DNA of 64,000 nucleotides from Octopus bimaculoides (GCF_001194135.2 NC_068983.1:29358263-29422262), one strand, 5' to 3'. Positions 32,014 through 63,144 are shown, counted from the stretch's first letter. A program made the numbers and translations. The notes: a model not told the origin generated them from the sequence alone.

Positions 32014-32526
32014 CTATATTCTTTTGGCACTCCCTGGAATTCCAGCAATGATCACAAGTATGAGGACATTGGTCAACACATTCTCGTGGGTCCTTATTAT
32101 CAGCAATGGAATGGGCCTCATTTGAACCTTCAGAAGTGATTTTAGTCCAGTCTATGGTTTCTAAGTAACAAAGGTTGGGACTTTTATTGAAACGAACAGC
32201 TCCTCGTTGAATAACAGTTAAGCTGCTCAAACCAATTTCCTCTAGATCAGGCATTTCAAATGCAACCAGAGCATAATTGTAGAAAAGCTCCTGACCCCGA
32301 ATAACACTCAAGTTTGGGAAAAGGTCACGTAGAGTTTTAAGTCCATAGGCACGATACATTATTAAGTAGTCTGTGATTTCAACTAATTTGGGGAAGCGCA
32401 TGTTTTGATAATCCTCAGGTTTCATGTAATCCAAAAGAATAATGCGCAAATACCCTTCTATCACAGAACAATGCTCTAATTGTTTGAAGTTCTCAATTTT
32501 GTTTTTTATCTCGATACTTGAACACA
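32014..32526 (-). CDS. InR: Insulin/IGF receptor family, L1 domain and start of Cys-rich region
   Basis: Acceptor tttcttgcttgcag|TG and donor ATA G|gttcgt; 513 nt, phase 1-1. Contains CSVIEGYL, FPKLVEITDYL, DLFPNLSVIRG, NYALVAFEM, RGAVR and LCYLETIDW, which are collinear with INSR/IGF1R L1. Confidence 0.97.
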
Positions 32527-33148
32527 CTGCAAGCAAGAAAAGAAGAAAAAAAAGAGTTAAATATCATTAAAAGTTTAAATGACAATTGTTTAAGGTTTTA
32601 ATGAAAAATAATATCTGAATTGATAAATAAAGGCCAACCAAGCAACTCCATTGTTTTATCAATAAAAAAAATGTATTGTAAGAATTTACAAAGAGACCCT
32701 CTCCCCAGCTGCAATAATGGAACAATGAATGTGTGCAATGATAAACAGATAAAGACATTTATCTTTTTTAGTGTGGGCATATCATTTAGTGATAATAATG
32801 ATCGGAATGAAAGCTAAAATATAGAAGGAAATATGAATTAAAAACTGTTTCTATTCAAATTATTTTATTCTACAGACACTTTAGACTTTGTTAGTTTAAT
32901 TAAGAGAATTTAGTCGAATGAATGTGACATTTTTCATTACAATTCTGTTGTGTTTATCTGAATACTAAGATTCCACAGTAGTAAAGTAAAATGACAATGA
33001 AAAATTGTTGTCAAGCTGTTACAACTTGCAGTACAGATGATGTGAAAGTTAATCTAACTTCTATAATAAATTATTTTAACATAAATCAAATAAAGACATT
33101 TTAACAGCAATAGTATTATTGTAAAACCTGACTGACAAGGCAACTTAC

Positions 33149-33261
33149 ATTCACAAAAATCCATATGAGTTTTGTTTATTGCAGTTTGCAGTTCACACGA
33201 TTCTTTTCTTAATAAGCAATCATTTGCATATATTTTATGGTCTGTGCCGCAAATTTGTGAC
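33149..33261 (-). CDS. Exon encoding the Kazal half of follistatin domain FS2
   Basis: Acceptor ttcttttatttaacag|G and donor GAA T|gtaagt; 113 nt, phase 2-1. Translation (T)SQICGTDHKIYANDCLLRKESCELQTAINKTHMDFCE(L) has the Kazal ICGTDxxxYxNxC motif. With 46008-46119 it completes a 10-Cys domain. Confidence 0.93.
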
Positions 33262-33524
33262 CTGTTAAATAAAAGAAACAAGAGTTAATGAAAACTAAAA
33301 ATATACAGTGAAATAATTACCTTTCTCCTTTCTTTATAATTTTGCCGTGAATGTCTTGTTATATTATCTTAATTAGTTAATGTTTTAATATGGCTGTCTC
33401 TCTGCTGTCCAATTAATTAGAAAGCAGATTTTCATCCCCATCAACAAAACACCAGACCTGGTGCGAAAGAGGAACTTTATGAAGTTGCTTGGCTTGCAAG
33501 AGACAGCAGCCAAATCTCTCTAAA

Positions 33525-33880
33525 GTTCTGGTGTGTAGTAAGAAGTTTGCCTCTCAACCACATGGGTCTGGGTTCAGTCCCACTTGAGTAATTGTCTTCT
33601 ACTGCTGATCAAAGCATTGTGAATTGATTTGGTAGACAGAAACTGTAAGAAGCATGTTGTGTGTGTGTGTGTGTTTTCGTGTTTGTGTCTGCCCCTCCAC
33701 AGCTTGACAACCAGTGTTGGTTTGTTTACATCTCCATAACTTAGCAGTGTGGCAAAAGAGTCCGACAGAGTAAGTATCAGACATTAAAAAATATTACTAG
33801 AGTTGATCCATTCAACTAAAACCCTTCAAAACAGTGTCCCAGTGCTGCCAAAGTCTAATGACTGAAACAAGTATAAGATA
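33525..33880 (+). mobile_element. SINE family B, diverged copy
   Basis: Same head, (TG)n and 3' ccataacttagc...gactgaaacaag segments, more diverged. Confidence 0.75.
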
Positions 33881-34812
33881 AAAATTTAATCCCCCGATAC
33901 ACAGAAAAAATAGAATGATTCATGAATTGAACAGCTTTGATCATACAATTCCTCAATAAGGGCTGATCTAGGGTCTTAACAACAGCAACAACAACACAGA
34001 AGCTTTCAGTAAGGAATAGAAATTCAAGTCAGATTTGAAGAACATCAAAAAAATTTAACCTAAGAAAAACAAAACCCCTTTCTTATTTCCATGAAACAAA
34101 ACTCTGACTTTCAGAATGAATTACATGATACATCAACAGGCATGATGGCTGTATGATAAAAAATTTACTTCCCAACTACATGGTTCTGAGTTCAGTGCTA
34201 CTGAGTGGCACTGCGCAAGCATCTTCCACTATAGCCTTGGGCCAACCAAAGCCTTGTGAATGGGTTTGATAGATAGAAATTGAAAGAAGCCTCTGTGTGT
34301 GTGTGTGTGTGCGCGCGCGTGCATGTGTGTGTGTATAGACATATTTATATATTGAGGGTAATAAAGGGAATATTAATTCAATTAACATCAATTTAAAACC
34401 AAGTAGCCTAGCATATAAAAAAATCTGAAAATTCAAAAAAATTGTATTACATGTGTATATATTCTTATATGCATATCTTTTTTATTTCTGTATGTGCATG
34501 TCTTAGTATCTGTGTTACCCATCCTGCTGCTTGACAACTGATGTTGGTATGTTTACATCCCCATAACTTAGAAGTTCAGCAAAAGAAACCAATACAATAA
34601 GTACCAGGCTATAAAAAACATATAAGTACTAGCATCGATTCATTCAACTAAAAAATCCTTCAAAGCAGTGCCCCAGCATGGCCACAGTCTAATGACTGAG
34701 ATAAGTGAAAGATAAATGATAAAAGTTCTTCAGTGATCTCAATAAGAGATATATATATAAACATAAGTAATAACTGCTTCTACTTTGAAAATAATTAAAA
34801 GATGTTCTAGTT

Positions 34813-35744
34813 CAGGGATGGGGAAATTTCTGCCCACATGTGCAATTGCGCCTGCGAGCCCATTTTATTAAACCCGCAGGATAGTATACTTATATGTACT
34901 AAACATGTTGTTGTGGAGACGCAATGGCCCAGTGGTTAGGGCAGCAGACTTGCAGTCATAAGATCATGGTTTCGATTCCCAGACCGGGCGTTGTGAGTGT
35001 TTATTGAGCAAAAACACCTAAAGCTCCACAAGGCTCTGGCAGGGGATGGTGGCGAACCCTGCTGTACTCTTTCACCACGACTTTCTTTCATTCTTTCTTC
35101 CTGTTTTTGTTGTGCCTGTAATTCAAAGGGTCAGCCTTGTCACACTGTGTCACGCTGAATATCCCCGAGAACTACGTTAAGGGTACACATGTCTGTGGAG
35201 TTCTCAGCCACTTGCACGTTAATTTCACAAGCAGGCTGTTCCGTTGATCGGATCAACTGGAACCCTTGACGTCGTAAGCGGCGGAGTGCCAACAACATGT
35301 ACTAAATATAGTAAATTTTTCAATTATAAAATTTATACAATATTTGTATGCCTATTTGTGACATAGGTCGCATTTCCACTACAACTTAAAACAGTTAGAC
35401 TCGAAGAGAAAATCGTCTGGTAATTGCCATTTGATTGGAAATTTTGTTTTCACTATAAAACACATATTGCTAGGTTTGTACCACTCCCTTGAGATCCAAC
35501 TACACTCTAGCTGAAAAATATAGAATACTTCATAAGTGATATAAACATCCTAAATTCAGTAGTGGTGTTAATGAAGATGTTACATGTTAATTTAATGTCT
35601 TAAGCTTATTATTAATATATATCAAATTATACATAGATATATACAAGATTTACACAGATATAAGAGTTAGAACTTGTGATCTGCCCGTGAACCCTTTTCT
35701 TTGGAAATTTTTGCTCATTGCACTAAAAAGTTTCCCCACCCCTG
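34813..35744. mobile_element. Non-autonomous hAT-like DNA transposon with nested SINE
   Basis: TIRs CAGGGATGGGGAAATTT / CAGGGGTGGGGAAACTT; 8-bp TSD ttctagtt (34805-34812) and ctctagtt (35745-35752). Confidence 0.75.
34904..35296 (+). mobile_element. tRNA-derived SINE (family A), full length, inserted in a hAT-like element
   Basis: A box TGGCCCAGTGG and B box GTTTCGATTCC; TSD ATGTACTAAA at 34894-34903 and 35297-35306. Confidence 0.9.
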
Positions 35745-37149
35745 CTCTAGTTAAACTCTGGAAATATAGGGGTAGATAAAACACCTTGGGGTATTTAGTT
35801 ACAGCTTTTCGCATTCTTATTTCAAATCCCACCAAGACCAATTATGTATTTCTTTTGTTTCAGAGTCAACAAAATAAGAAAGAACCAGTTATGAATAACT
35901 GAATCAATTTTAATTATACTCCTTGCCCCTAGTTACCCGTAATTATTTAATTATTACTAAATTAATTACAGCACAAATTTTAAACTCCATCAGCAGAACA
36001 TCACAAGTCAATGAGAGAGAGGGAGAAAGAGGGAGGTGGGTGAAGATAAGAGAGTAAGCTTCTACAAGGTTGCTGAGCCCACTAGAAATAGCAGCCAAAT
36101 CTCCCTAAAATCCTATCTTATTTATCTTTTACTTGTTTCAGTCACAGGACAGCAGCCACGCTGGGGCACTGCACTGAAGGGTTCTAAGTAAACAGTACTT
36201 TTTCTTTTTTTTAAAGTGAGGTACTTATTCTATCAGTCCCTTTTCCTGAACTGCTAAGTTACGGGGACATATACACACACACACGCACACAACAGGCTTC
36301 TTTCAGTTTCCCTTTGACAGATTCATTAACAACACATTAGTCAGCACAAAGCTGTAGCAGAAGATACCTGCCGAAGGTGCTGTGTAGTGGGATTGAACCC
36401 CAAACCATATGGTTGCAAAGCAAGCTTCTTAACCACACAATCATGCCTGTGCTTGTGTCTTTTTTTATTTTTTTATTTTTTATATAAACAAGGTTACACA
36501 GGACTTGTACATGTGTTAGAATTCAATATATAAGCTCCAAATACTACTTTAGAAAGCGTCTCAAAGAATAAAACCCTTCTTTCGATTATTTGTCTCCTGA
36601 CTATATTTCAAACATAAAAAAGGGGGTGGAGGCCGGTCTTTTTATAGTTGCATAATGTGGCAGACAAGCATGTGTTATTTATAATCTCTTTTATGGCGTT
36701 GTGTGACCTTGAGAGTGAGTCAGAGTAAACAGGCTGAGAAAAAGATTAATTAAGAAATGCATTCATTAATATATGTGATAAGAATGGAAGATGCAGACTA
36801 AATTCAATATGTGTCTTGACTGATGACAAACAATTTATAAAGTCTGGCCTAAGGTTTAGGTTCTAGAACAAGAGATAAAAATTAATCGAAATCATGATAG
36901 CATACATTTCCCAAAGTGGCCAATTGCTAGAGAGGTAAAAACCTGAAAAACTGTTATTAATGCATTAAGAGGTTGCCCCACAAGTTATCCAATAATCCTG
37001 AATTTTCTTCTCTCCCAGATCATAAATAATGGTCTCATATGTTTACACAAGACCAGCAATTCTAGGGGAGGAGGTAAGTCGATTACATCAACCCCAGTGC
37101 TCAACTGGTACTTTGCTAATGATTCTGCCAGCTTGTCGCCTTCCACAGA

Positions 37150-38830
37150 TCATAAATAATGTTTCGTGTCCAGAGCTACACTCTATATAGTATTTCTAAC
37201 AACAGCTGTCTCTGACTACCATATAAACACTTCAAAGGTTCTTGAGTTTCTTTTGAAACTTTCAAACACAATCTTTACCAATACATCTACATACCTGCCT
37301 TTATCAGATCACTTGATTCCCTTTCTAACCAAAGCATCTATCTTATACCTTCATCTCCTGAATGTCTCTGTACATCAATCAGCCCTTGTGGTCAGATCTA
37401 GCCAGTTCTATACAACAACTACTTCTAGCCACATATGTACCCCACCTCTGACTCATCCAAAATAGCAGGTGACCAATTCCACTCTCATTGGTATTTATTT
37501 TCGGCATCATTTCTCACATAACCACAGACTATAAAGTGGTGCATCTGCAGCTGTTCTGAAGCAGGTGAAGAACATTGTTCCACCACCTATAAGAAATCAC
37601 CTGCCATCACCATTGAATGTTGTTTACCCATTACCAACCACAATGTCAGACAAACATTCAATTTAGCAAAAGATGTATTCAATCACAGCATGGCCTGCAA
37701 ATTCTTGTCTCCCAAATTGCAGCTAGGCATTCTGGTCTCTTACTAATCATTTGTACAAACCTTTTCAAAATCTTCCCAACTGCCTTTCCACAACTAAGAT
37801 GACACTGTAAGTGGCAATCCTGCAAATTAATGTGACCACATTTACTGCCCAATTTGTCTTAAGCTCCACACTGTACAACATGCACAACAAAATTCATTTA
37901 ACCCTTTCGTTACTAACCCGGCTGAAACCGGCTCTGGCTCTGTAGTACAAATGTCTTGTTTTCTTAAGTTTTGAATTAAAATCTTCCACCAAACCTTAGT
38001 CACAATTTATGTTCCTAACACTAGCTTAATGATAACTAAGTTATTTTACTAAATTCTTTCTTATATTCAAAATTAATTGAAAGAACCACAGACCATCTCA
38101 AAATAAATACAGTAACAAAAGGGTCAACATTCAATTTCCCCCATTTACACACAGCCAGCATGAAAGAGAATCTCTATGCAGTTACTCATTCAACCTTGAA
38201 CAAAAGAAAAAACTAAGTGAAGTCTCCTGTCAAATCACACATTATTGCCTTAAATAAGAAAACACACCTATTGTAATCCTAAATACATCTGCTAAAAAGA
38301 TGAGGTAGTTACAGCTTGAATGACTTTGATCATAAGCTAGCTTGATTAAGGTTGACCTAAGACGAAAAGATAAGAATACCAAGATATCCAATGTCTTTGC
38401 TCTGCTAACCATAAGCTTATTCCTCTTACTTCCAATATCTCAAGGCTAATGGAGACAACCTCAAACAAATCTCTTCACATGCTGAAGACCTAGTCTCTCC
38501 TATGTTACATAACATTGGTCTCTTATCCATGGGAACATGGTGGAAAGCAATGTTGTCTCAGCATTAACAAAGCCTTTGTCTACCATGAACCTTCAAGTTC
38601 TTTATCTGTCTGTCATCTCTTCATTTTCAAATGTTTCTGGCCAGCTGTACTGTTCCAGTATGTGCAGATAGGGCACTCACAAACCAACACACTATCAACT
38701 CTGGAATACTCCATGGTTTGGTAATATCCCCCAAAGCATCTCTTTATATACCACGTCACTGTGAATTTCCCTCTTTCTTAACCTTCCAACACGCAAGCAC
38801 GTACTGCCTTTAATGAACCAAGAACACAAA
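37150..38830 (+). mobile_element. Decayed CR1/L2-type LINE fragments interrupted by a MITE (about 37900-38085)
   Basis: Endonuclease-end SDH motif near 37310 and a degenerate YADD (HAED) near 38478; frames are broken. Confidence 0.5.
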
Positions 38831-38874
38831 ATCATTCTCCACTGAAAACATGACAATTTAATTTCTTTTAACAA

Positions 38875-39285
38875 GTGGCTGTGTGGTAAGTAGCTTGCTT
38901 ACCAATCACATGGTTCCGGGTTCAGTCCCACTGCGTGGCACCTTGGGCAAGTGTCTTCTACTATAGCCTCAGGCCGATCAAAGCCTTGTGAGTGGATTTG
39001 GTAGACAGAAACTGAAAGAAGCCCATCGTACATATATATATATATATATATATGTCTGTATGTATGTGTGTGTACGTGTTCGTGTGTCTGTGTTTGTCCC
39101 CCCAACATCACTTGACAACCGATGCTGGTGTGTTTACGTCCCTGTAACTTAGCAGTTCGGCATAAGGGACCAATAGAATAAGTACTAGGCTCACAAAGAA
39201 CAAGCTCTTGGGGTCGATTTGCTCGACTAAAGGCGGTGCTCCAGCATGGCCACAGTCAAAATGACTGAAACGAGTAAAAGAGTAA
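38875..39285 (+). mobile_element. SINE family B copy
   Basis: Collinear with 1788-2203. Further diverged copies lie near 36120-36445, 46940-47640 and 49555-49965 on the minus strand. Confidence 0.88.
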
Positions 39286-42200
39286 ACCATTCCGACCTAT
39301 CAATTCATACAATTAAATTTTGAGACTTGCAACAATTACAAGGCCATACAATCCTTAGTTCTTTTAAGTGTCCCAACTCTTTTTAATGTGTTTTGCTGGG
39401 ACCATACTCTTCACTTAACAATTTATCTAATTCTATTTTCCCCAGAACCACATCTTTCTGAAGTTTTCTCATTGCCCAGTTTTGTGGGTAGTTTCATTGA
39501 TGTAGTATTGTTCAGTATTAACTGCTTAATTTGAACTTCTGTGGGTTAGCACCTACAGAGTGAGTATCAAACCAGAAAAGTTCAAGCTGAAGAGTTTATC
39601 ACAGTACCAATCTCACCTGTCCCAGACACTGTATCTTTCATTTCGACATGTGAACTAGTGAAAAACTTGTGCTAAATAATAAATAAGAAGTCAACAAGAC
39701 AACCTGAAATTGTTTCATATTTTGTAAGTTGGCATAACAAAATATCAACACATTTTGGATAAATTAAATTCAAAATAAGACTCTGAACAAGAGACATACC
39801 AACATTATCTATTTCAAAAGGAATGCTAATGGTTCTAAAGTAGAAACAGGAGGAAAAAAGGAAGCCAGTTAGAGTGGTTATAAACTCGTAAGGTAACCTT
39901 GAAAACAATTGATAATTTATTACAACAATAGGAAGTAATACAGTAAATTCACAACCCTTGAAAGAAGGAAATGGTTCTCAAGCATATGAATGAGATCAAG
40001 CTGCACCTATACATAATTATATTAACAGGAAATAATGGATTCATATTCAAAATTAATAGTGTTAAAAGTGAAAGGAAATTTAGTCAGAATAGTAAATTCT
40101 TTGTATGTGAAGCTGTCCTACATAGTATTACTAACATACATTTTGCCTCATTATTTTTTAAAAGCTACATATGGAAGAACACAAAACAATTATTTCAGAT
40201 GTATTTTATATTCTAATTCTAATTGTATCAGAAAGAGATTTTTTATGAGATTCTAAACTAAGAGATAATACTTTGTGTTAACAACAGTATGAATAAGGTG
40301 CAGCAAAAGAATGAGATACAAAGAATTTATTACAAACTGAATGTTAATTTGACAGTGAGAAGAATTAGAGGCATGCGAAGCAGGTAATTAAATACAAAAT
40401 ATCCCAATGACATGTAATCATGTGGGATTGATTTCAGTCCAAATTCATGATGAAAATAAGCTGGATACAACAAATGGCTAGTGGTGACCCACCTGTGTTT
40501 CAAATTTCACCCTGGATCCAAACAATCTTGACAGTTCTCACCAACTATTCCTCTACACTTAATGTTCTCCATTTGGTCTTTGCTAAGAATTTTTTGTAGT
40601 TATTCTAATTATTATTATTAAGGCAGTGGTGAGCTGGCAAAATCATTAACATGCTGGATAAAATGCTTAGTGGCGTTTTGTTTGTCTTTACATTCTGAGT
40701 TCAAATTCTGCCAAGATTGACTTTACCTTTCGTCCTTATGGGATCAATAAAATAAGTACCAGTTGAGTACAAGAGGGGGGGGGGGTTGATGTACTTGACT
40801 TATCTCCTCCCCAAAAATGATTGGCTTTGTACCAAAATTTGAAACCATTATTATTATTATTATTTTAAAAGGATTGGTGTAACTCTTCATAAAGATAAAT
40901 AGACAATATGAAGGGCATCAGACAGATTTAGTCTGACCATGCAATCATAGAAAATCATCATTGTCATCAAAATTTAATGTCTATTTCCATGTTGGCATGG
41001 GTTAGATGGCTTGATAGTAACTGGCAAGGCCATAGGCCACACCAGGTACCCATAGTTTGTTTTGGCTTGGTTTCAACAGCTGGATGCCCTTCCTAATGCC
41101 ACCCACTTTACAAAGTGTACTGGGTGCTTTTTACATGGCACCAACACCAATGCTTTTTATGTGGCACCCACACTAATGCATTTCACATGGCACCTTGGTT
41201 TTAGGACCTCGGTTCTGTTGTGGTAGGCAGGTCTTCTCAAGTGCAACAAAGCGCTGATGAAGATATATATGGTGGCTGTTCCTCAGTAATGTTGAAGGAG
41301 ATAAGACTATCTTGGGAGATTTTACTTTTGCCTGTAGTATGTCTAGAATGAGGTTTCTAAGTTGCATTTAGATGATGTCTGTGGGAATTCTTATCAAGGT
41401 TTAAAGGAGACCATCTTCAAGCAATAGCATGAGATGACTGGGTGCAACTGTTTGGACAGTGAAGCTGATTTGATGACAGTACTTTTTGGCACTGGAGGCA
41501 AACACACACATGCATGCAGAAATATACATATATGAGAGAGAGAGAGAAGATTAAAACATATGATGTCAAATCAGTCAGTGTTGAAACAGCAGTGACAGAT
41601 AGATGGTGTCAAAACAGCTGTGCCAAAATGTCTCATACCTTTCCAATAGACCATATAACTCTTTCTCTCTATCAGGATTCATTGTCCATTATTTTCACAA
41701 CCACATAGTATTCACATCTCTAACATTACTATACAGCATTATATTTCATGAGATGTTTCATTATAAGATAGTTTCTCTCCTTCTCCTACACCATATTATT
41801 AAGCTAAATTCCCAAAATATAAATTCCATAGCATTTAATAATGATAAACGATGCCAAAGCCGATAGCAGAGTTTGGCAGTCTTCTGGCTCACCAGCTCCT
41901 GTCAAACCATCCAACCCATGCCAGTATAAGAAGCAGATATTAAATGATGATGATGATTGCTTATTGACTGAAGATACAACATTGCTAATTGAAATTGTCT
42001 ACATTTTAAAGTTTATGTGCAGCGCCACGTAAAAGTGCCAGTGTGGTGTCATGTAAAAGCACCTGTGTGACACTATGTAAAAGCACCATGCACACTCTGT
42101 AAAGTGGTCGGCGTAAGAAAAGGCATCCAGTTGTAGAAGCCATGCCAGATCAGGCAGGAGTCTGGTGCAGCCCCAACCCTAGCTTGCCAGCTCTGGTCAC

Positions 42201-43023
42201 ACCATATAACCTATGACAACATGGATAACGGACGTTAAATAATGATGATGAAATTTATTTCCAGTATAGCATGGGTTTTCATATATTATGCAAAAGAAAA
42301 GTAATTAGAAACTAATTGAAAATATTGTGGGCATGTTACTTGTACATGTGATGGGTGGAAAGCATTTCTACAAGGGGTGGAGAGAAAATGAATGAGGTAA
42401 ATGTGAAGAAGTCAAAAAAAATGTTTGTGAAGAATAGACTTCACAGTGATTTACAAAGGGCTTGTAAGGAGGATAAACAGCATACAACATGGCTGCTCTG
42501 CAGTTTTGCCCTCTGCAAGTCAGTCAGTATGACAAAATAGTTGATGTGACAATAGTTCCTTGGTTAACATGATAAAGGTTAGTGAAATAATGGTAACAGA
42601 GAGGGAGAAGTAGGGGGGGGGCATTGAATAACACTTTAGGAGTTGTTAGAAACAGCCATAGGCAGATGATATTGTAACTTGACTGTTCTTTTAGTCTTAT
42701 TGGTTTCAGGCACTGGGGTGTGGCCATGCTAGAGTAATGCTTTCTCGGATAGAGTTGATTATGCCAAGACCAGTACTTATTTCCTTGACAATAGAAGGGT
42801 GTAAGACAAAGTCTACCAGGGTGGGGGTTGATACAATCAAAGGACATAAGAAAGAAAAAAAAACATACAGAAGGTGTACTGTTGGATTCTCAATGGATTC
42901 TACCATATACTTGTTAATAAGGAATTTATAAATTAAATAAAGAAAAATTTCTATCTTCAGTTAAAATATATGGTAAAAGTTTACTCAATATAAGATATCA
43001 GCGTCAGTAAAATAGCCAACGCC

Positions 43024-43035
43024 CCAATGACGTCA
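43024..43035. promoter_or_regulatory. Overlapping CCAAT box and palindromic CRE (TGACGTCA)
   Basis: Sequence ccaatgacgtca. This is a motif match only, with no functional support. Confidence 0.2.
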
Positions 43036-44558: not shown

Positions 44559-44595
<37 letters not shown>

Positions 44596-46007: not shown

Positions 46008-46119
46008 GTAGGTTCATTACTGCAGTCATGTGAACATGTACATCGCTTATCTCCATTTTCAAATTCTTTGCAGACACCATCAAAGAGGCAAGATGTTGCA
46101 GTGCATAAAATATCTGGAC
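46008..46119 (-). CDS. Exon encoding the FOLN (EGF-like N-terminal) half of follistatin domain FS2
   Basis: Acceptor tttttcttatcatttctccag|GT and donor CCT AC|gtacgt; 112 nt, phase 1-2. Translation (G)PDILCTATSCLFDGVCKEFENGDKRCTCSHDCSNEP(T), 6 Cys. Confidence 0.9.
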
Positions 46120-49100
46120 CTGGAGAAATGATAAGAAAAATACAGATATAAGAATGAACATTAAAGAAAGAAGGAAAAAAAAAAAACACCCTGATTTTTT
46201 AAAAATTAAAACAAAATTTGAATAAGAATCAATAATATCTGGAAGACAACTGGTAAAAATTAGCTGGAAAAAAGATATTTAAATCAGATTAAGACCGGTA
46301 TTTTTCTTTTCTATTTCTTTTAAAGATAAAATTTTTAAACATCGTAAAGGAAATGAAAAGAAAGACTGTAAAAAAAAAAAAAAAAAAAANNNNNNNNNNN
46401 NNNNNNNNNNNNNNNNNNNNNNNNNNNNNNNNNNNNNNNNNNNNNNNNNNNNNNNNNNNNNNNNNNNNNNNNNNAAAAGGATCAAAATATCCCTGATAGA
46501 ACTTACAAAGCATTGTAGAACTTTGGATAATATTCTGGAGTGGGGGAGTGTGATTTCACAACAAAATTATGTGAAATACATCATGTATAATTGGGTTTTT
46601 TTTTGTTTATAAGTAAAAAAAAAAAAAAAAAAAAAGTTGCAGGGAAATTACTCAGCGCACCTACCCCTCATGTAAGCAAATAAGCAAGAGCAAAGATTTG
46701 AGCTTAAAACTGTGAAATACTGAACCAGACAAACTAAATAATCTTAGTAAGGGGCAGCCTATCATCTAAATATGAACTACAAAAAATGTAGTTTATATTA
46801 AGGGGAAAAAAAATTATGGTTGTTGTGAAGGGAAGTCCAGGAAGTTTTTTTTTCAGAAACAGAAGAGAAAGAAATCTTGTTCTTTGAATGAATATAAGTC
46901 AAAATAATTTCAATGAGATCAAAAGAAAATTAAGTTTTTATCTTATATTTTTTACTTGTTTCAGTCATTGGACTGTAGCCATGCTAGGGCACACCACCTT
47001 AAAAGGTTTTAGTTGAATAAATTGACCTCAGCATGTTTTTTTTAATTTTTAAGTCTAGTATTTATTCTATGGAGGTGCATGGCTCTGTGGTTAGAGCATC
47101 GAGGTTGTGAGTTCGATTCTCAAACCGGACTGTGTGTTGTGTTCTTGAGCAAGACACTTTATTTCAAGTTGCTCCAGTTCACTCAGCTGTAGAAATGAGT
47201 TGCGGCATCACCGGTGCCAAGGTGTATCAGCATTTGCCTTTCCCTTGTATAACATCAGTTGCATGGAGAAGGGAGACCAGTATGCATGGGTGACTGCTGG
47301 TCTCCCATAAACAACCTCACCTCAACTTTTGCCTCAGAGGGGAACTTTCTAGGTGCAATCTCATGGTCATTCATGACTGAAGGGGGTCTTTACTCCTTTA
47401 CTTTACTCTTTTATGGGGACATACACAAATTAACACCAGTTGTCAAAGTGGTGAGGAACAAACACAACAAAACACAAGACACATACATATGATGGGATTT
47501 CTCACAATTTCTGTCTGTCAAATTCACTCACATTAGTTAGCCTGGGGATGTAGCAGAAGACACTTGCCTAAGGTGCCGTGTAGTGGGACTGAACCTGAAA
47601 CAATGCTGTTTGTGAAGCAAGCTTCTTAACCATACAACAGACATCTCAGCCTATAGGTGAAATTATAGAAACATCAATGACAAATCAAGGTGTTTCAAAT
47701 GCTTCGATGTCCGACTTTGTAACAGGAGAAATCATACAATAAAGAGAATTAAAAAAATGAATAAATAAAATATAATAAATGAATTCTTTGTTACTATCAA
47801 CAAAGAAAACTTTCCATCATTTGAATCAGTGTTAGTTTACATCATTGAAAATAAATAAACTGGTACAGATGAAAGTTCAAATAGAAACTGTACTATATAC
47901 AGTACTTCAATGAATATTCAGTTATGATTATCAAGAAAATTCCCAATGTGGCATGGAAATGGTAGCTACATGCTAATTAGAACAGTGGTTCCCAACCATT
48001 TTTTGCACCACTGACTGGCTTCATGCAAAACAATTCTTCCATGGATTGGGGTGGGGGAATCACACACACTATCTGTAGCCTAGTGGTTAGTGTTGCACTC
48101 ACAGTCATAAGAGTGTGTGGGTTCAATTCCTGGACCAGGCAGCGTGTTGTGTTCTTGAGTAAGACACTTTAGTTTATGTTGTTCTGTGATCATTTTGAAA
48201 TTTGATGTGTGACACACTTACGAACCTGTATAGAAAATGTCAATGTGGTGGAATGGGTGAGCTAAGGTACAGTACATACACTTGACCACTATAAACAAAT
48301 CATTTGTGCAGATCAATCAGCAAAAATGTTAAGCTATATTTTTATAGCAAAAGTGATATTGTATGCTGTTAATGTACAGAATTGGAACTGCTATTCCAAT
48401 GAACATGCACAAATATAAAGACTTTTCCTTGTTTCTTTATACTTTATACACCCTGCATATGCAAATGTGTACACACATACACACACACCATTCTCAACAC
48501 CTGTAAGTAAAAAATAGCAAAGCTTTTAAATTTTAATATTCCTAGGGTACAAAAAAGAAAGAAGAAAGGTCCAAAGAACTAGAAGCTAACAATGCTTCTC
48601 AAAATCCTTATTGAAAATAAAGAGACTACAGTTTCTAACAGAAAATGGGGAAAAAAATGGCTATGAAACAGCTTCAGAATGAAGCAGCATGATGGTGAAA
48701 GAGCTTTCAACTCTGTTGATAATACTAAGTCTACTACATCTGAACATAGATATAGGCAGCAAACCTTTTACTATTTTAAAAGCTCTGTCCTTAGCACACT
48801 CTTCAACTCATGCAACTAAATAGTTTTCAAACCAACACAATTACTCAATCTAAAAACAGCAGCCAAATCTCCTACAATCCATAACTTTTTGAATAATGTG
48901 TTCCTCATACCCCAAAAAGGCAGAATTATTCATAAGTGGAAATCCATCACATATAGGCCTGCCTCATCAAGGCTGGGACTAAGCAACAACAAATAATTAT
49001 TTAGAACAGAAGTTCAGATGACAAGCTCAATATACTGAAAATGTTTTGCTCTTAGTATTGTATTGAGTTTTCTTTGAAATTACCTGTAAACAAATACTGA

Positions 49101-51697: not shown

Positions 51698-51902
51698 CCT
51701 TTTAGCATTTAAACTGGCCATATCAAGCCAAAATATTCTACCTGTTTTAAGTTCAAACTAGTCAGATCCAACCTCTCACACCTGTTCAACAATGCCATAG
51801 CACTGAAATCTCTCAAAGCTACAAGATAAGGCATGGATTAATTCAAAACAATGAGAAATAAATAAGCATTACATTTGACAGAGTAATCTGAATGCTAAAG
51901 GG
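51698..51902. mobile_element. TTAA-flanked MITE (piggyBac-like termini)
   Basis: TIR CC(C/T)TTTAGCATT, with TTAA at 51694-51697 and 51903-51906. Copies at about 5682-5898, 18096-18312, 22321-22542, 43922-44128 and 44765-44959. Confidence 0.82.
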
Positions 51903-52214
51903 TTAAAAGCTTATCTATATCGACAAAGTTTGGGTAACCAAGTTCATTGAAAGCACTGGCTAGTTCTCTATCTCTATCCAATACAGTCTTGTTTACTGTA
52001 ATGGTACGATTTTCACACTGAACTTTATCAGATGAAAGTTCATTTGTTAATGATTGCTGAATCTAAAAAAATAAAACAGTTCCGACTCTGCTCAGTAGGG
52101 ACTATGTTGACTAAATGGCTATGGTGTCAGTCCACTAGCAAACATTCTCTTCACACTTGTCACCACTAACATTAGAAGAAGCAAAGTACTTGAGAAGATA
52201 CTGTGTTGCATTAT

Positions 52215-52360
52215 CAATTCATTGTGGGTTCAATTCTATAGTAGATGTTTTGCTGTGTGGATTTGGGCATCACAATTCTATATAGGTGTTTTGTTGTGTA
52301 TTTGGATAACCCGGTTCTACAATAGATATTTTGTTATATATTTGGACAGCACAATTCTAT
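52215..52360. repeat. Degenerate minisatellite, about 40-bp unit, about 3.5 copies
   Basis: Recurring caattcta...ttttg(c/t)tgtg...atttgg units. Confidence 0.65.
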
Positions 52361-55233: not shown

Positions 55234-55309
55234 GGCACTGTCATGGTATTAGCTGTCAGAAGTGAAAGTAGAAAAATCTGACAAGGAACGTTACTGCTGG
55301 TTTGAGTTA

Positions 55310-55394
<85 letters not shown>

Positions 55395-55694
55395 CACTCG
55401 AAAGTTATTGGAACAAATTTGACACCTATATCCATGCGTTTGAAAACACACAGAGTATAAGGGTACTACTAAAGCAGAGTGGTCCCGAACGCGCAGTCGC
55501 GCTAGCTAGTCGTGAGTGGTCGATCCTATTATTTTTAAACTTCAAACTTCATTTGTTTTCTATTTTGATAAACTCTCTCTGTTGAAAATTATATTTTTAT
55601 ATTTCAAATAATTTGCAATTTCAGAAAATATATTTTTATATTAAATTTGCGTTTTCTAATTTGATAAATTCTACGGACACAGAGGTGAACGAGT

Positions 55695-55730
<36 letters not shown>

Positions 55731-55751
55731 TAGAGAGAGAGATAGATAGTG

Positions 55752-55782
<31 letters not shown>

Positions 55783-55883
55783 TAGCTCCGGCTAGTCAGT
55801 AGCCAAAGAATCAACTCAAACCAGCAGTAATGTTCCTTGTCAGTTCTACTTTCACTTCTGACAGCTAATACCATGACAGTGCC
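55234..55883. mobile_element. Foldback-type non-autonomous DNA transposon with long TIRs containing compound microsatellites
   Basis: Termini GGCACTGTCATGG...CCATGACAGTGCC; exact 8-bp TSD CAGAAGCT at 55226-55233 and 55884-55891; arms of about 170-190 bp. Confidence 0.85.
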
Positions 55884-56891
55884 CAGAAGCTTACCTTGAA
55901 CTCTGGCTCAAAAATGGTAGCTTACATCAAAATTACAGTTTTATGCAGAGAACTAACATTAACCCACAATTGTATGATGGTGCTTACATTTAGTCCACTT
56001 ACACAAATAAATAGATTCCTACAGGTTAGCCAACAATATTTACCTGTCTCAAAATCATGCACTATGTTTATTTGTCTCACGCTAATATCAGACATTACAA
56101 TAGACAGGTTCATAAACAATGAAACAGACATGACAGTATGCTAGTAAGTTACATGATATTTCCTTTTCCTATATACATTACAGAATGCATATAGTTGGTA
56201 CACTTACAAAGAGAAAAACATTCAAATACAATCGACACATTCATCAAAGCCAACACCTGGAAAATCTGATCCAAGAATTAGTGTTTCTTGGCTTTGTTTC
56301 TAGTCATTTTTACACTTTCTTAGTAGAATACATCTCACACGTCTATATCAGACTAAGACCAATTCCATCACACGCTGATAAAAACCTGCTACTAATAACC
56401 ACATAATGCAGTTTTACCTGCTCATGGATGAGTTAACAGTGACTAAACTAGCCCCTACAGAGCTTGTTCAACAAGGAAAGGGTGTGGGCATCAAATAGAA
56501 TGAAAAACTAAATCAGTTAAAAGCGAATGAGCTCCTTGAGAGTCAATTGTACCCATATCCTGGTGCCAATGGGATAACCAATCCCAATACAAATATATTA
56601 TATTGATACCAATGTAATTATAGTTTTATACCAGACAGGTCAGATGCATTAAGAAAGCCTAAGATTGAAAGAAGACGAGAAAATTGGTAAAACTAAAAAT
56701 CTAATGGTAGAAGAAAAGTTATGGGAAAATGGAAATATAAAAAGTGACTTTCTGCTACTTGGTTGTATGAACTAGTTGAGAGCATCAGCCAAAATTGCTT
56801 AACAATTTCTCTGTCATCTTCTGAAGTAGGAACTACAAGTTATGTCCTAAATCTCAAGCCAATCTAAATAACACTCCAATATATATATATA

Positions 56892-57410
56892 NNNNNNNNN
56901 NNNNNNNNNNNNNNNNNNNNNNNNNNNNNNNNNNNNNNNNNNNNNNNNNNNNNNNNNNNNNNNNNNNNNNNNNNNNNNNNNNNNNNNNNNNNNNNNNNNN
57001 NNNNNNNNNNNNNNNNNNNNNNNNNNNNNNNNNNNNNNNNNNNNNNNNNNNNNNNNNNNNNNNNNNNNNNNNNNNNNNNNNNNNNNNNNNNNNNNNNNNN
57101 NNNNNNNNNNNNNNNNNNNNNNNNNNNNNNNNNNNNNNNNNNNNNNNNNNNNNNNNNNNNNNNNNNNNNNNNNNNNNNNNNNNNNNNNNNNNNNNNNNNN
57201 NNNNNNNNNNNNNNNNNNNNNNNNNNNNNNNNNNNNNNNNNNNNNNNNNNNNNNNNNNNNNNNNNNNNNNNNNNNNNNNNNNNNNNNNNNNNNNNNNNNN
57301 NNNNNNNNNNNNNNNNNNNNNNNNNNNNNNNNNNNNNNNNNNNNNNNNNNNNNNNNNNNNNNNNNNNNNNNNNNNNNNNNNNNNNNNNNNNNNNNNNNNN
57401 NNNNNNNNNN
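56892..57410. other. Assembly gap; other gaps at 15192-15576, 16277-16286, 20443-20452, 46390-46474, 59358-59490 and 62652-63039
   Basis: N runs; these could hide small exons. Confidence 0.99.
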
Positions 57411-57646
57411 AAAATAAATCTTTAATTTTACACATTCAATAGTTAATGTTGCTTATATCAAATTACTGTTATGCTGTTAAGGCTTAAACTAATATTTTTG
57501 AATAGGTTTTTAAGAGAACTCTAACAACAGGGAGGGGAGGGTGTTCTCAAATTTCAATGTGAGTGAAATTTTAACTGTGGGCAAAGGGTTCCTCACCCAT
57601 GCTTTGAATGCTTAACCTGCTAGAAACAGCAGATGACACCCAACCA

Positions 57647-57682
<36 letters not shown>

Positions 57683-58664
57683 TTCTAAAAGCAGGATGGT
57701 CAAGACTGAATCATTCAATCATATGTTTGCTTGAGTTACCAGACTTAACTTTGGGCTGAAAACAAAACCCCTAGAGAGGTTATTGTAATAACCCAGGGTT
57801 AAAAAAACACACACAAAAACACCTCCACCACCCCATTTCATTGTTCCAAAAATTATAACAGGATAGACTATTTTTAAAGACAAATCAAATTCAACACTTT
57901 TATGTCTGCTTTCTTCACACTGCCATAGACATAACATTTAAAGTTGGACACATTCTATGGCTGGATGCCCTTCTTGACATCAACCCTTACAGCTGGATCT
58001 TTTGTTTTGGAAACAAATAATATCACTGACAAAGCAGTGCCTTTGAGAAGATATGCAGATACTAATACACACACACACAGTACACAGAAATATGTGTATT
58101 GGCTTCCATCAACAAAATTTCACTCACAAGGCATTGGTCAGCTTGAGGCTATAATAGCAGACACTTCACCGGTACAAGGTACCAAGCTGTGGTATTGAAA
58201 AGATTAAGTAGACTTTCTAAATCTATGATAATATAACTCTCACATATTTGTTTAAAAGTAAAAAGTAAAGGAGTTCTTTTAAATTTACATAGATTCCACA
58301 TTCTACTGAACTAGCAAATCTACAGATCTACGATGGAGACATAAAATGAGGGTGGGAAGTTATAACAGCAGTATGTATTGAGAAATGTGTAAATGGACTT
58401 GATAGATCACTGGGTGATGTCTTAGACAAATCACATTATTGTTGGTGATACAGCATTGTATTGTAGCTATATGATGTCTTTGCGACTAAGTGACATGTGA
58501 TGATGATTCACTCCCAAACTGAAATAGGCTCCCAGCTTCTGTATCATGAATGATTATGTGGACCACTCCTAATGAAAGCCAGACACTATATACTGACACA
58601 CACTTTTTCCAGTTTATTTTTGCTATTAACCGTCCTCGTGACCCCCTTCGTATCTATGATGGGC

Positions 58665-59226
58665 CACGAACTATACAATGAAAATCCAGAGTTACTCATG
58701 GTCGGTGTATTTTTAATAAAAATGTGAAAGTCGTTTATCAATTCAAAAATCGATATCCACAAAATAATCATACTTTCTGATTTTTTAATGCTGAAAACCT
58801 TCCTGACGACCATGTTTGTAATCCCCCAAAAATATCTTAACTATTGGTCCTGTCACGAAGAGGGAACAAAGAGATGAACAGATGGACATAATACCCATTA
58901 TAGTAAGATAGTAAACCTGCTCATCTACGATGGGAAATAAAGGGATAGTATCGCAAACCTAAACCCTTCTAAATTCACGAACTATATGGTGGGGAGGGGA
59001 ATCCAGAGTTAATCCTAGTTGCCAATTTTAGCAAAAAGAATCAAAGTTGATTTATTAATACAAAACTCAATATCCACTAAATAATCAAATTTTATTACAT
59101 TTTTTTCACTAAAAACCTTCCTGATTACCTCTTTCGTAACCCTCCAAAACATTATGACCATTGGACAAGCCATTTGACTGTGAAAAGGGAACAGACAGAT
59201 AGCCATAATGCTCATTATAGTAAGAT
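58665..59226 (+). repeat. Two diverged tandem copies (about 245-250 bp) ending in CATTATAGTAAGAT
   Basis: Copies at 58665-58909 and 58976-59226 share cacgaactata, aatccagagtta, atatccac, aaaaccttcctga and cattatagtaagat. Confidence 0.7.
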
Positions 59227-60309
59227 GACCAACAGTTTAAAGTTTTTGATAGAATTTTTTTATGGTTTAGTTCGAGGAAGAAGGGCAACTGTAGAGCAAA
59301 AGGAAGTTCTCACTATCCTTAGATTAGTCCTAACTACTTGCAATACAAAGACACCATNNNNNNNNNNNNNNNNNNNNNNNNNNNNNNNNNNNNNNNNNNN
59401 NNNNNNNNNNNNNNNNNNNNNNNNNNNNNNNNNNNNNNNNNNNNNNNNNNNNNNNNNNNNNNNNNNNNNNNNNNNNNNNNNNNNNNNNNNGAGTACACAA
59501 GTGAGATATTTTTGTTAAAGAAATACTAATTACTTCATTGATTAATCCTTTTTTGTGACTACATTTCTAATAAAACTTACAATCTATATTCGTTTATATC
59601 CATTTACACATTTCAGTCATGTGATTGTGGTCATGCTGGAGCACCACCATGAATATTTAAATTAGTTTTATAAAATAATAATATCTTGGACAGCTTTAGT
59701 AAAATCAGGGTCTCTTCTCATTATTAATCTGGAACTTATAACTTTAAAATTTTCAATAAAATTACGACAGGTTTCCCCAAATTTAAAAGTATTAAACATT
59801 TTAAAATAGTATGCTTTATATCATAGAACTAATGAAAGTCTAAGGCAGGTTGGTATTAAATGAGTTAATTATAATAAGCTTTCAGGTATTTAAAATGTAT
59901 TTTGTAATCTAGTGTATAGCACCCGGGTATCTAAACCCAACAAATATTTAACTGTCTTTTACCCTCTATGACATAAACTATAAATTTTAAATCAGCCCAG
60001 TTAGATATAACAAACTTCACGAATTGAAGGAACACCAGCAAAACAACATGGAGTGAAAAAAAAAAAAAAAAAAAAAAAAGAAAATGAACATAGCAATAGG
60101 AAATATTCAAAAAGAAAAATCTGCAGCTCATTTCATGTCTACTCAGTGAAACCTAGATTGTGCATATGGAGAAAAGCCAGCAATCAAATAAAGGCAAGTT
60201 GAAGCATAATGACCAACACGAGACTGGAATGAAGTTCAAGTGATGCAAGGTTTTACAAAGGGTGGGCGTTTTTTTTTTTTTTCTTTCTTGAGAATAGTTT
60301 GGAAGTTAC

Positions 60310-60525
60310 CTCGTGTAGGGTTAGGACAATAGTCATGAAGAATGAGATCAATATTCTTTTCACAGCCCTCTCTCCTCATCTCACACTCACTATTGTAAAC
60401 TCGGCCATCCGAAGCACAGACTTCGCCATCCGAAGACGGGCTCTCATGACATTCGATGTCACACTCACAGACATTATTTTTACAAGTTGCACCATATGAA
60501 CAGTTACTATTGCTCGTACACTGAT
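60310..60525 (-). CDS. Exon encoding a complete follistatin domain (FOLN + Kazal, 10 Cys), FS1; proposed most 5' visible exon of the insulin-receptor-like gene
   Basis: Not in the ORF track. Acceptor ctatttcag|AT and donor CGA G|gtaact; 216 nt, phase 1-1. Translation xQCTSNSNCSYGATCKNNVCECDIECHESPSSDGEVCASDGRVYNSECEMRREGCEKNIDLILHDYCPNPTR(G) has the Kazal VCASDGxxYxSEC motif and 10 Cys. Confidence 0.93.
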
Positions 60526-62190: not shown

Positions 62191-62216
62191 CACTTATATA
62201 TATATATATATATATA

Positions 62217-63091: not shown

Positions 63092-63144
<53 letters not shown>

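What the first reader, a model, noticed from the sequence alone, without database searches (positions are those of the whole stretch)
32014..60525. Insulin-receptor-family gene with tandem N-terminal follistatin (FOLN-Kazal) domains spliced in frame onto L1
Seen in the sequence: three Cys-rich exons upstream of L1 on the same strand, with canonical splice sites and phases that chain exactly (1-1, 1-2, 2-1, then the L1 acceptor in phase 1). Predicted protein: ...VCASDGRVYNSEC...HDYCPNPTRG-PDILCTATSC...HDCSNEPT-SQICGTDHKIYANDC...MDFCE-LCSSIEIKNKIENF... These are two complete 10-Cys follistatin domains followed by L1-CR-L2-FnIII. The Kazal exon ends only 622 bp upstream of the L1 acceptor and has a perfect GTAAGT donor. 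That leaves little room for a separate gene end plus a receptor promoter and signal exon. Established knowledge: INSR, IGF1R, INSRR and Drosophila InR have no follistatin domain before L1. Follistatin domains occur in follistatin and FSTL3 (activin/myostatin binders), agrin, SPARC and TMEFF, and a Kazal module occurs in the insulin-binding protein IGFBP7. Inference: this may be a chimeric receptor tyrosine kinase with a built-in binding-protein module. It could couple TGF-beta-family or matrix/heparan-sulfate binding to insulin-type signalling, or gate ligand access. I know of no description of this architecture but could not search.
Basis: partly seen in the sequence, partly recalled or inferred. 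Interest (0 to 1): 0.95.

Follow-up and report, generated by a model that had tools for sequence, protein, structure and literature searches.

The report
Cephalopod insulin receptor with follistatin domains
This is the 5' half of an octopod insulin-like peptide receptor gene in which one or two follistatin-type (FOLN+Kazal) domains are spliced directly onto the hormone-binding L1 domain; a cuttlefish cDNA and an argonaut gene model show the same design, but I found no paper that describes it.

Summary
On the minus strand, three Cys-rich exons (60525-60310, 46119-46008, 33261-33149) encode two complete 10-Cys follistatin (FS) domains. They chain in frame, with GT-AG sites, onto the L1 exon (32526-32014), then CR, L2 and the start of FnIII-1. 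All assembly gaps are intronic, and none lies between 46119 and 32014.

Two independent lines support the key FS2-to-L1 junction. The best relative of the L1 exon among 1.84 billion representative proteins is GAB1600284.1, "insulin-like peptide receptor isoform X2" of Argonauta hians. It reads signal peptide, one FS domain (the window's FS2, about 91% identical), ELCSSIEIKNK L1, then on to the tyrosine kinase. The published Sepiella japonica ILPR cDNA has L1 at residue 220. That equals my model plus a constant 55 residues, which leaves room for exactly two FS domains. Both of its 5'-RACE primers match the window's FS1 exon.

The module looks cephalopod-specific: no other top L1 relative has it. 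I found no paper describing it.

Its function is untested. FS2 ends three residues before the first L1 cysteine, next to the hormone-binding face, so I favour modulation of ligand binding. Both FS domains are acidic, which argues against heparan-sulfate binding.

The parts
60310..60525 (-). FS1 exon: one complete follistatin domain (FOLN hairpin plus Kazal, 10 Cys), a symmetric phase 1-1 exon
   Evidence: Kazal_2 scores 35.3 bits. It matches agrin and follistatin FS domains. The reverse complements of both S. japonica ILPR 5'-RACE primers match at 60404-60422 (16/19 nt, none expected by chance) and 60478-60495 (13/18).
46008..46119 (-). FS2a exon: FOLN hairpin and first Kazal Cys of the second FS domain, phase 1-2
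   Evidence: 86.8% identical (33/38) to Argonauta ILPR residues 46-83, with the same boundaries.
33149..33261 (-). FS2b exon: rest of the Kazal part of the second FS domain, phase 2-1, donor GTAAGT
   Evidence: 94.6% identical (35/37) to Argonauta ILPR residues 84-120. Kazal_1 and Kazal_2 hit.
32014..32526 (-). L1 exon (Recep_L_domain), phase-1 acceptor two nt before the first L1 Cys codon
   Evidence: 93% identical to Argonauta ILPR residues 121-291. Aligns with human INSR residues 5-164 at E 2e-59, with most site-1 residues conserved or conservatively replaced. The acceptor position and phase are the same in three other invertebrate loci.
14599..14765 (-). Cys-rich (furin-like) region, exon a
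12088..12271 (-). Cys-rich (furin-like) region, exon b
   Evidence: 96.7% identical to Argonauta
10649..10744 (-). L2 exon a
10033..10180 (-). L2 exon b
8923..9137 (-). L2 exon c
3341..3467 (-). FnIII-1, first exon
1626..1679 (-). FnIII-1, second (short) exon
32690..32780 (-). Candidate alternative first exon, unverified: it encodes MPTLKKINVFICLSLHTFIVPLLQLGRGSL, ends with a phase-1 GTAAAT donor, and would give an FS-less signal-to-L1 isoform
   Evidence: It is one of only two such candidates in 128 kb scanned on both strands. The criteria were chosen after seeing it, and an out-of-frame ATG lies 4 nt upstream.

Best explanation
The window holds the 5' half of the single-copy-type insulin-like peptide receptor (ILPR) gene of an octopod.

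Shown:
- The receptor's alpha-chain does not start with L1. It starts with follistatin-type modules: FS2 always, and FS1 in at least some transcripts or lineages.
- These modules are joined to L1 by only two residues (..DFC-EL-CSSIEIKNK..).

Inferred origin: the modules are phase 1-1 units. FS1 is one exon; FS2 is an exon pair with phases 1-2 and 2-1. They sit in the old phase-1 intron that separates the signal-peptide exon from the L1 exon in other animals. This is classic exon shuffling into a receptor tyrosine kinase, and it happened before octopods and cuttlefish diverged.

Inferred mechanism (about 0.4 for this reading): the equivalents of human INSR Asp12, Arg14 and Asn15, on the first rung of the hormone-binding sheet of L1, lie 4-7 residues after the first L1 Cys. 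FS2 must therefore sit at the edge of ligand-binding site 1. There it most likely modulates binding of insulin-like peptides, by adding contacts, changing selectivity or gating access. It is unlikely to act as a heparin anchor or a protease inhibitor.

The stated confidence refers to the architecture and origin, not to the mechanism.
For: - Exons, phases and open frame.
- Domains: Kazal_2 twice, Recep_L twice and Furin-like. The FS region matches agrin and follistatin.
- Argonauta hians GAB1600284.1 reads signal peptide, FS2, L1, CR, L2, FnIII, TM, tyrosine kinase. Pfam confirms Kazal_2 at 26.5 bits and PK_Tyr. Every exon of my model from FS2a onwards matches it at 83-97% with identical boundaries (FS1 has no counterpart in it). 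FS2 is about 91% identical, as conserved as L1 at 93%.
- Sepiella japonica ILPR cDNA, obtained by RACE (PMC9654127): an N-terminal hydrophobic segment at 27-49, L1 at 220-332, FU at 385-427, L2 at 507, FN3 at 644. These equal my model's coordinates plus a constant 55. Its 5'-RACE primers translate, as reverse complements, to VCASNG and GAVCK and match FS1. Its qPCR primers match L1.
- The L1 acceptor position and phase are conserved in three other invertebrate loci, and are implied in many ORF hits.
- Most site-1 residues are conserved or conservatively replaced, and FS2's last Cys aligns with human Gly5.
- Only the cephalopod protein among 195 L1 relatives has an FS module. Canonical signal-to-L1 receptors are seen in a Logan transcript-type ORF (P0014) and are reported for the clam Mulinia lateralis.
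Against: - There are no transcript data from the window's own species.
- The Argonauta protein is a gene model whose evidence base I could not inspect, and it lacks FS1.
- I did not see the Sepiella protein sequence itself. I had only domain coordinates and primers.
- The signal-peptide exon and the kinase lie outside the window.
- FS1 is separated from the rest of the gene by three scaffold gaps.
- The functional mechanism is pure inference. The only structure prediction I could run failed (mean pLDDT 32).
- The Pfam FOLN model did not hit.
Confidence: 0.88

Rival explanations
1. The FS exons belong to a separate upstream secreted gene (agrin- or follistatin-like). Their apparent fusion to the receptor is a gene-model or reading artefact, or a misassembly.
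For: The signal exon was not found in the window. Read-through of the FS2b donor reaches a stop after 32 codons. AATAAA-like strings occur in the AT-rich 622-bp intron. FS1 is linked only through scaffold gaps.
Against: The same FS2-to-L1 junction is present in the Argonauta hians receptor protein. A RACE-derived cuttlefish cDNA has the right length and FS1-matching primers. There is no gap between FS2a and L1. Phases chain exactly. FS2 is as conserved as L1 between the two octopods.
Confidence: 0.04
2. In octopods only FS2 is part of the receptor. On this reading FS1 is either a cassette exon that is mostly skipped, giving one-FS and two-FS isoforms, or it is used only by another transcript.
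For: The Argonauta protein goes from its signal exon (..NRR) straight to FS2 and lacks FS1. It was named "isoform X2", which hints at more than one isoform in the reference it was named after. FS1 is a symmetric 1-1 exon, so skipping it keeps the frame.
Against: The window's FS1 exon is intact: 10 Cys, good splice sites and an open frame. It matches cuttlefish cDNA primers at 16/19 nt across a deep split, which implies purifying selection. The cuttlefish cDNA has room for exactly two FS domains.
Confidence: 0.3
3. An internal promoter and first exon inside the 622-bp intron (ATG at 32780, donor after 32690) also produces a canonical FS-less receptor. The FS module would then be isoform-specific rather than constitutive.
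For: The peptide MPTLKKINVFICLSLHTFIVPLLQLGRGSL is signal-peptide-like and has a phase-1 GTAAAT donor 163 nt upstream of the L1 acceptor. Only 2 such candidates were found in 128 kb scanned.
Against: The scan criteria were set after the candidate was seen. An out-of-frame ATG lies 4 nt upstream. AT-rich introns readily encode hydrophobic ORFs. There is no support from the Argonauta or Sepiella sequences.
Confidence: 0.1
4. Functional rival: the FS module binds TGF-beta-family ligands (activin, myostatin or BMP-like), as follistatin, FSTL3 and agrin do. This would couple or sequester those ligands at the insulin receptor.
For: The closest solved relatives are agrin, follistatin and FSTL3 FS domains. 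From my own knowledge, agrin's FS region is reported to bind BMP2, BMP4 and TGF-beta1.
Against: Follistatin and FSTL3 also need their N-terminal domain, which is absent between the signal peptide and FS2 in the Argonauta protein. Sequence identity to follistatin is low. There is no binding test.
Confidence: 0.15
5. Functional rival: the FS domains act as Kazal-type serine-protease inhibitors or as heparan-sulfate or matrix anchors.
For: Both domains score above threshold on the Kazal Pfam models. From my own knowledge, follistatin FSD1 binds heparin.
Against: The residues at the canonical P1 position (second after the second Kazal Cys) are Glu in FS1 and Asn in FS2, read from the sequence. These are atypical for inhibitors. 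Both domains are acidic (pI 4.5 and 4.8; 13 acidic against 6-7 basic residues) and lack a basic cluster.
Confidence: 0.07

Closest known systems
Insulin receptor family (human INSR, IGF1R and INSRR; Drosophila InR; molluscan insulin-related peptide receptors)
   Same: The order L1-CR-L2-FnIII is the same. L1 is about 50% identical to human INSR, with most site-1 residues conserved or conservatively replaced. The phase-1 intron just before the first L1 Cys is conserved. The ortholog has a TM segment, a class II tyrosine kinase with the DIYETDYYR motif, and a C-terminal tail.
   Different: One or two follistatin domains lie between the signal peptide and L1. The canonical receptors seen here go from the signal peptide straight to L1 (P0014; Mulinia lateralis as reported). 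From my own knowledge, the long N-terminal extension of Drosophila InR is low-complexity, not a folded Cys-rich module.
Follistatin-domain proteins: agrin, follistatin, FSTL3
   Same: They share the 10-Cys FOLN+Kazal module. The best PDB sequence matches are agrin 8s9p (E 3.7e-23), follistatin 2b0u (E 1.8e-11) and FSTL3. From my own knowledge, their FS modules are also built from phase 1-1 exons.
   Different: Those are secreted or matrix proteins without a kinase. The follistatin N-terminal domain is absent here, and there is no basic heparin-binding patch.
TMEFF1/TMEFF2 (tomoregulins)
   Same: From my own knowledge, these are membrane proteins whose ectodomain begins with two tandem FS domains.
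   Different: They have an EGF domain and a short cytoplasmic tail. They lack L domains and a kinase. I did not test this comparison here.
IGFBP7 / IGFBP-related proteins
   Different: In those proteins hormone binding resides mainly in the N-terminal IB domain. They are soluble. There is no evidence that the receptor's FS domains derive from them; the nearest matches are agrin and follistatin.
Other insulin-receptor-type kinases with foreign N-terminal modules: Venus kinase receptors, and the SRCR-bearing receptor of the clam Mactra antiquata
   Same: An insulin-receptor-type kinase is combined with an added extracellular module. In Mactra, three SRCR domains sit at the same place, immediately before L1.
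   Different: From my own knowledge, Venus kinase receptors replace the whole L1-CR-L2 ectodomain with a Venus-flytrap domain. Mactra uses SRCR domains, not FS domains. These appear to be independent acquisitions.

Membership tests
Insulin receptor family (class II receptor tyrosine kinase) | L1 - Cys-rich (furin-like) - L2 ligand-binding unit | tested here: met
   Recep_L_domain twice (E 4e-49) and Furin-like (E 4e-28) on the spliced model. E 2e-59 to human INSR L1.
Insulin receptor family (class II receptor tyrosine kinase) | Three FnIII domains with an insert and a basic cleavage site | tested here: inconclusive
   Only the first two exons of FnIII-1 lie in the window. The Argonauta ortholog has fn3 hits. 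The Sepiella paper reports three FN3 domains and a KR site.
Insulin receptor family (class II receptor tyrosine kinase) | Single TM segment plus a tyrosine kinase with the YxxxYY activation loop | not testable with these tools
   There is no kinase motif in the window; the 3' half of the gene is beyond its left end. The ortholog P0052, 83-97% identical per shared exon, has PK_Tyr_Ser-Thr at E 1e-94 and the DIYETDYYR motif.
Insulin receptor family (class II receptor tyrosine kinase) | Conserved site-1 hormone-contact residues in L1 | tested here: met
   In the alignment to 4zxb: D12>E, I13=I, R14>K, N15=N, L37=L, Y67=Y, F88=F, F89>Y, N90=N, Y91=Y, E97=E. F39>D, as in the other invertebrate sequences fetched.
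Follistatin (FS) domain = FOLN hairpin + Kazal | Ten cysteines with spacing C-x(4-5)-C-x5-C-x(4-9)-C-x-C-x3-C-x(8-10)-C-x10-C-x6-C-x(11-13)-C | tested here: met
   Both units have 10 Cys, with spacings 5,5,4,1,3,10,10,6,11 and 4,5,9,1,3,8,10,6,13.
Follistatin (FS) domain = FOLN hairpin + Kazal | Kazal profile match above the curated threshold | tested here: met
   Kazal_2 scores 35.3 and 31.3 bits (cut-off 22.8). Kazal_1 scores 25.7 bits (cut-off 21).
Follistatin (FS) domain = FOLN hairpin + Kazal | FOLN (Pfam PF09289) profile match | tested here: not met
   There was no FOLN hit at E<=1. The hairpin is supported only by the Cys pattern and by PDB alignments to agrin and follistatin that begin at query residues 2-7.
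Follistatin / FSTL3 proper (activin and myostatin antagonists) | N-terminal domain (ND) preceding the FS domains | tested here: not met
   In the Argonauta protein only about 11 residues separate the signal peptide from FS2. In Sepiella about 6 residues separate the hydrophobic segment from the predicted FS1 start.
Canonical Kazal serine-protease inhibitors | Inhibitor-type P1 residue (Lys, Arg, Leu, Met and similar) two residues after the second Kazal Cys | tested here: inconclusive
   P1 would be Glu in FS1 (C-H-E) and Asn in FS2 (C-S-N), read. This is atypical, but activity was not assayed.

The most novel reading that the evidence does not exclude
The FS module is a functional second ligand-binding site built into the insulin receptor. 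On this reading cephalopod ILPR would either integrate a TGF-beta-family or other FS-binding signal with insulin-like signalling in one molecule, or use alternative inclusion of zero, one or two FS domains to tune hormone selectivity between tissues. All such isoforms would be in frame.
Probability: 0.15. Interest if true: 0.9.

Novelty: new variant of a known kind. Interest (0 to 1): 0.62.

Why it matters
The insulin receptor ectodomain is among the most conserved and best-studied receptor architectures. A folded ligand-binding-type module fused two residues from L1, right beside hormone-binding site 1, would be a natural experiment in how that site can be extended or gated.

It is also a clean example of exon shuffling of phase 1-1 modules into an ancient phase-1 intron of a receptor tyrosine kinase. 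It appears to be shared by octopods and cuttlefish and absent from the other molluscs sampled here, so it is a candidate cephalopod innovation in growth and reproductive endocrinology.

A clam receptor carries three SRCR domains at the same position. That suggests this intron is a recurrent entry point for new modules in molluscs.

On the practical side, the published cuttlefish ILPR paper reports about 170 residues between the N-terminal hydrophobic segment and L1 without assigning them any domain. Those residues now have an identity.

Tried and rejected
- The search for homologous proteins with the spliced FS-FS-L1 protein returned only single-exon L1 ORFs at 57% identity or less, and no FS hits. 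The FS-only query returned nothing. That index evidently lacks the cephalopod proteins, because the exhaustive search later found Argonauta ILPR.
- An exact look-up of the window's L1 ORF found no record.
- Three unidentified invertebrate loci with 10 kb upstream of L1 show no FS or Kazal exon. A 13-aa similarity in L003 proved to be microsatellite noise.
- AlphaFold2 on Argonauta FS2+L1 without an alignment gave mean pLDDT 32, which is unusable.
- I searched 60526-64000 and the whole window for the signal exon, including with the Argonauta exon-1 peptide. I found nothing. It lies outside the window or in a gap.
- A kinase-motif search of the window found nothing.
- Five literature searches combining insulin receptor or ILPR with Kazal, follistatin, FOLN, cephalopod or octopus found no description of the architecture.
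- I considered and rejected the idea that either RACE primer fits FS2 better than FS1 (13/18 against about 9/18 ungapped by my own hand count).

Full report
**Observation**

The gene lies on the minus strand.
- FS1 exon, 60525-60310: 216 nt, acceptor tttcag, donor GTAACT.
- FS2a exon, 46119-46008: 112 nt.
- FS2b exon, 33261-33149: 113 nt, donor GTAAGT.
- L1 exon, 32526-32014: 513 nt.

The phases chain as 1-1, 1-2, 2-1, and then a phase-1 acceptor. The joined frame is open. Each FS unit has ten cysteines with follistatin spacing. Each scores above the curated Kazal_2 threshold. The pair matches agrin (E 3.7e-23), follistatin (E 1.8e-11) and FSTL3 among solved structures, with alignments that include the N-terminal hairpin. 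The Pfam FOLN model itself did not hit.

No other FOLN or Kazal motif exists in any frame of the window.

**Gaps**

The window has seven N runs. The three flagged ones all lie in the FS1-to-FS2a intron. The nearest is 270 nt from an exon; the 46390-46474 run abuts a homopolymer and the 56892-57410 run a TA repeat, while the 59358-59490 run has ordinary flanks. No reading frame crosses a gap. The stretch from FS2a through FS2b to L1 (46119-32014) is uninterrupted, so the critical 622-bp interval is not an assembly join. Only FS1's linkage depends on scaffolding.

**Rest of the gene**

tblastn with fetched homologues, followed by inspection of splice sites, gives these further exons:
- CR: 14765-14599 and 12271-12088.
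- L2: 10744-10649, 10180-10033 and 9137-8923.
- FnIII-1: 3467-3341 and 1679-1626.

All are GT-AG and in phase. Pfam on the 629-aa model finds Kazal_2 twice, Recep_L_domain twice and Furin-like. There is no kinase motif in the window and no signal exon in 60526-64000. Both ends of the gene lie outside the window.

**Is the FS-to-L1 splice real?**

Two independent external lines say yes.

(a) An exhaustive HMMER search of 1.84 billion representative proteins with the contiguous L1 ORF gave P0052 as top hit (E 2e-109). This is GAB1600284.1, "insulin-like peptide receptor isoform X2 [Argonauta hians]". It has 1492 aa, and its gene spans 152 kb. Its sequence reads:
- signal peptide;
- RLTHGSGLNRR;
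- GPSILCTATSC...MDFCE, which is the window's FS2;
- LCSSIEIKNK..., which is L1;
- then CR, L2, FnIII, TM and a class II tyrosine kinase.

Pfam confirms Kazal_2 (26.5 bits) and PK_Tyr. tblastn of P0052 against the window reproduces every exon from FS2a onwards, with the same boundaries and 83-97% identity; FS1 has no counterpart in P0052. FS2 is about 91% identical, as conserved as L1 at 93%, which indicates purifying selection. The window is therefore from an octopod.

(b) PMC9654127 describes the RACE-derived ILPR cDNA of the cuttlefish Sepiella japonica (MK611806, 1587 aa). It reports an N-terminal hydrophobic segment at 27-49, L1 at 220-332, FU at 385-427, L2 at 507-622 and FN3 from 644. 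My model's L1, CR, L2 and FnIII landmarks equal these after adding a constant 55. The cuttlefish protein thus has about 201 residues before the L1 exon, made up of 55 plus the 146 residues of two FS domains.

The paper's Table S1 lists the two antisense 5'-RACE primers. Their reverse complements translate to VCASNG and GAVCK. They match the window's FS1 exon at 60404-60422 (16/19 nt; 0 of 100 shuffles gave any match) and at 60478-60495 (13/18). The qPCR primers match the L1 exon (VEITDY and TVIQRG). The authors never mention follistatin or Kazal domains in the receptor.

**FS1**

The Argonauta model lacks FS1. Its signal exon ends in phase 1 and joins FS2a directly. FS1 is a symmetric 1-1 exon, so inclusion and skipping are both in frame. 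The FS1 exon in the window is intact and resembles the cuttlefish cDNA across a deep divergence. I conclude that FS1 is used in at least some transcripts. Whether it is constitutive in octopods is open (rival 2).

**Origin**

The L1 acceptor (cAG | NN TGY, phase 1, two nt before the first L1 Cys codon) is at the same position in three unrelated invertebrate loci. It is also implied by the xV-C or xA-C starts of many single-exon ORF hits. From my own knowledge, human INSR intron 1 falls at the same place.

Canonical receptors put the signal exon upstream of this intron. P0014 shows a signal peptide followed directly by L1, and the Mulinia lateralis paper reports the same domain order.

The FS units are phase 1-1 modules lying in that intron. 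This is the textbook signature of exon shuffling.

**Distribution**

Among 195 fetched L1 relatives, only the cephalopod protein has an FS domain before L1. The bivalve Mactra antiquata receptor has three SRCR domains at the same position.

**Function (inference)**

Alignment to human INSR (4zxb numbering) puts FS2's last Cys at Gly5 and the first L1 Cys at Cys8. The site-1 residues Asp12, Arg14 and Asn15 appear as Glu, Lys and Asn four to seven residues later, and most other site-1 residues are conserved or conservatively replaced. The linker between FS2 and L1 is two residues.

FS2 must therefore sit against the N-terminal rung of the L1 beta-helix, at the edge of the hormone/alphaCT binding surface. 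I favour modulation of insulin-like-peptide binding, through extra contacts, altered selectivity or gating, with a probability of about 0.4.

The alternatives fare as follows:
- Heparan-sulfate binding is disfavoured, because both domains are acidic and lack a basic cluster.
- Protease inhibition is disfavoured, because the P1-equivalent residues are Glu and Asn.
- Follistatin-like ligand trapping lacks the follistatin N-terminal domain, though agrin-type binding of TGF-beta-family ligands cannot be excluded.
- A structural test failed: single-sequence AlphaFold gave mean pLDDT 32.

**Comparison with known systems and novelty**

The gene is a member of the insulin receptor family. The L1-CR-L2 unit and the site-1 residues were tested and met. 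The kinase is seen only in the ortholog. What distinguishes it is an N-terminal module of the agrin/follistatin FS type.

The sequences are public and one cDNA has been published. However, five full-text searches found no description of FS or Kazal domains in any insulin receptor. I therefore rate it a new variant of a known kind: real, conserved within cephalopods and unremarked, with unknown function.

**Caveats**

- There are no transcript data from this species.
- The Argonauta entry is a gene model.
- The Sepiella evidence is indirect (coordinates and primers).
- A candidate signal-peptide exon inside the 622-bp intron (32780-32690) could give an FS-less isoform.

Noticed in passing
window 32690-32780 (minus strand): An ATG-initiated ORF, MPTLKKINVFICLSLHTFIVPLLQLGRGSL, has signal-peptide character and ends at a phase-1 GTAAAT donor 163 nt upstream of the L1 acceptor. 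It would give a canonical FS-less receptor. It could be an alternative or relic first exon, or chance. An out-of-frame ATG lies 4 nt upstream.
   Followed up: partly
P0117 (KAL4222001.1, Mactra antiquata), residues about 40-360: A bivalve insulin-receptor-type protein of 1805 aa carries three SRCR domains immediately before L1 (Pfam SRCR E 8e-43). The Mulinia lateralis receptor, from the same clam family by my own knowledge, is reported as 1802 aa with no mention of SRCR (PMC13198591). This suggests a second, independent addition of an N-terminal module at the same site.
   Followed up: partly
window 60310-60525, 46008-46119 and 33149-33261: FS1 alone is a phase 1-1 unit, and so is FS2a plus FS2b together. 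The Argonauta signal exon also ends in phase 1. Receptor isoforms with zero, one or two FS domains would therefore all be in frame. The Argonauta protein is named "isoform X2" and has only FS2.
   Followed up: partly
window introns, e.g. 2-330 / 26481-26793 / 34982-35312, and 1788-2207 / 21158-21504 / 24747-25132 / 30259-30487 / 38874-39286: The introns hold dispersed short repeats of 120-470 bp. They are 75-94% identical, occur in both orientations and fall into several families. They look like SINE-type elements, often next to TA or GA microsatellites.
   Followed up: partly
window 7440-8056 (minus strand): Frame-shifted ORFs resemble a reverse transcriptase (RVT_1, E 0.014, below the cut-off). 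This is probably a decayed retroelement in the L2-to-FnIII-1 intron.
   Followed up: partly
window 32014-32100 (end of the L1 exon): The loop between the Cys of CVDQCP and the CW motif is very short (CPHTCDHCWNSRECQ) in both the window and Argonauta. Other invertebrate and human receptors have 20-35 residues there. This is a second lineage-specific change close to the L1/CR boundary.
   Followed up: no
tool behaviour: The word-indexed protein search did not return the Argonauta receptor, although it is 93% identical over L1. Only the exhaustive representative search found it. Negative results from the indexed search should not be read as absence.
   Followed up: yes
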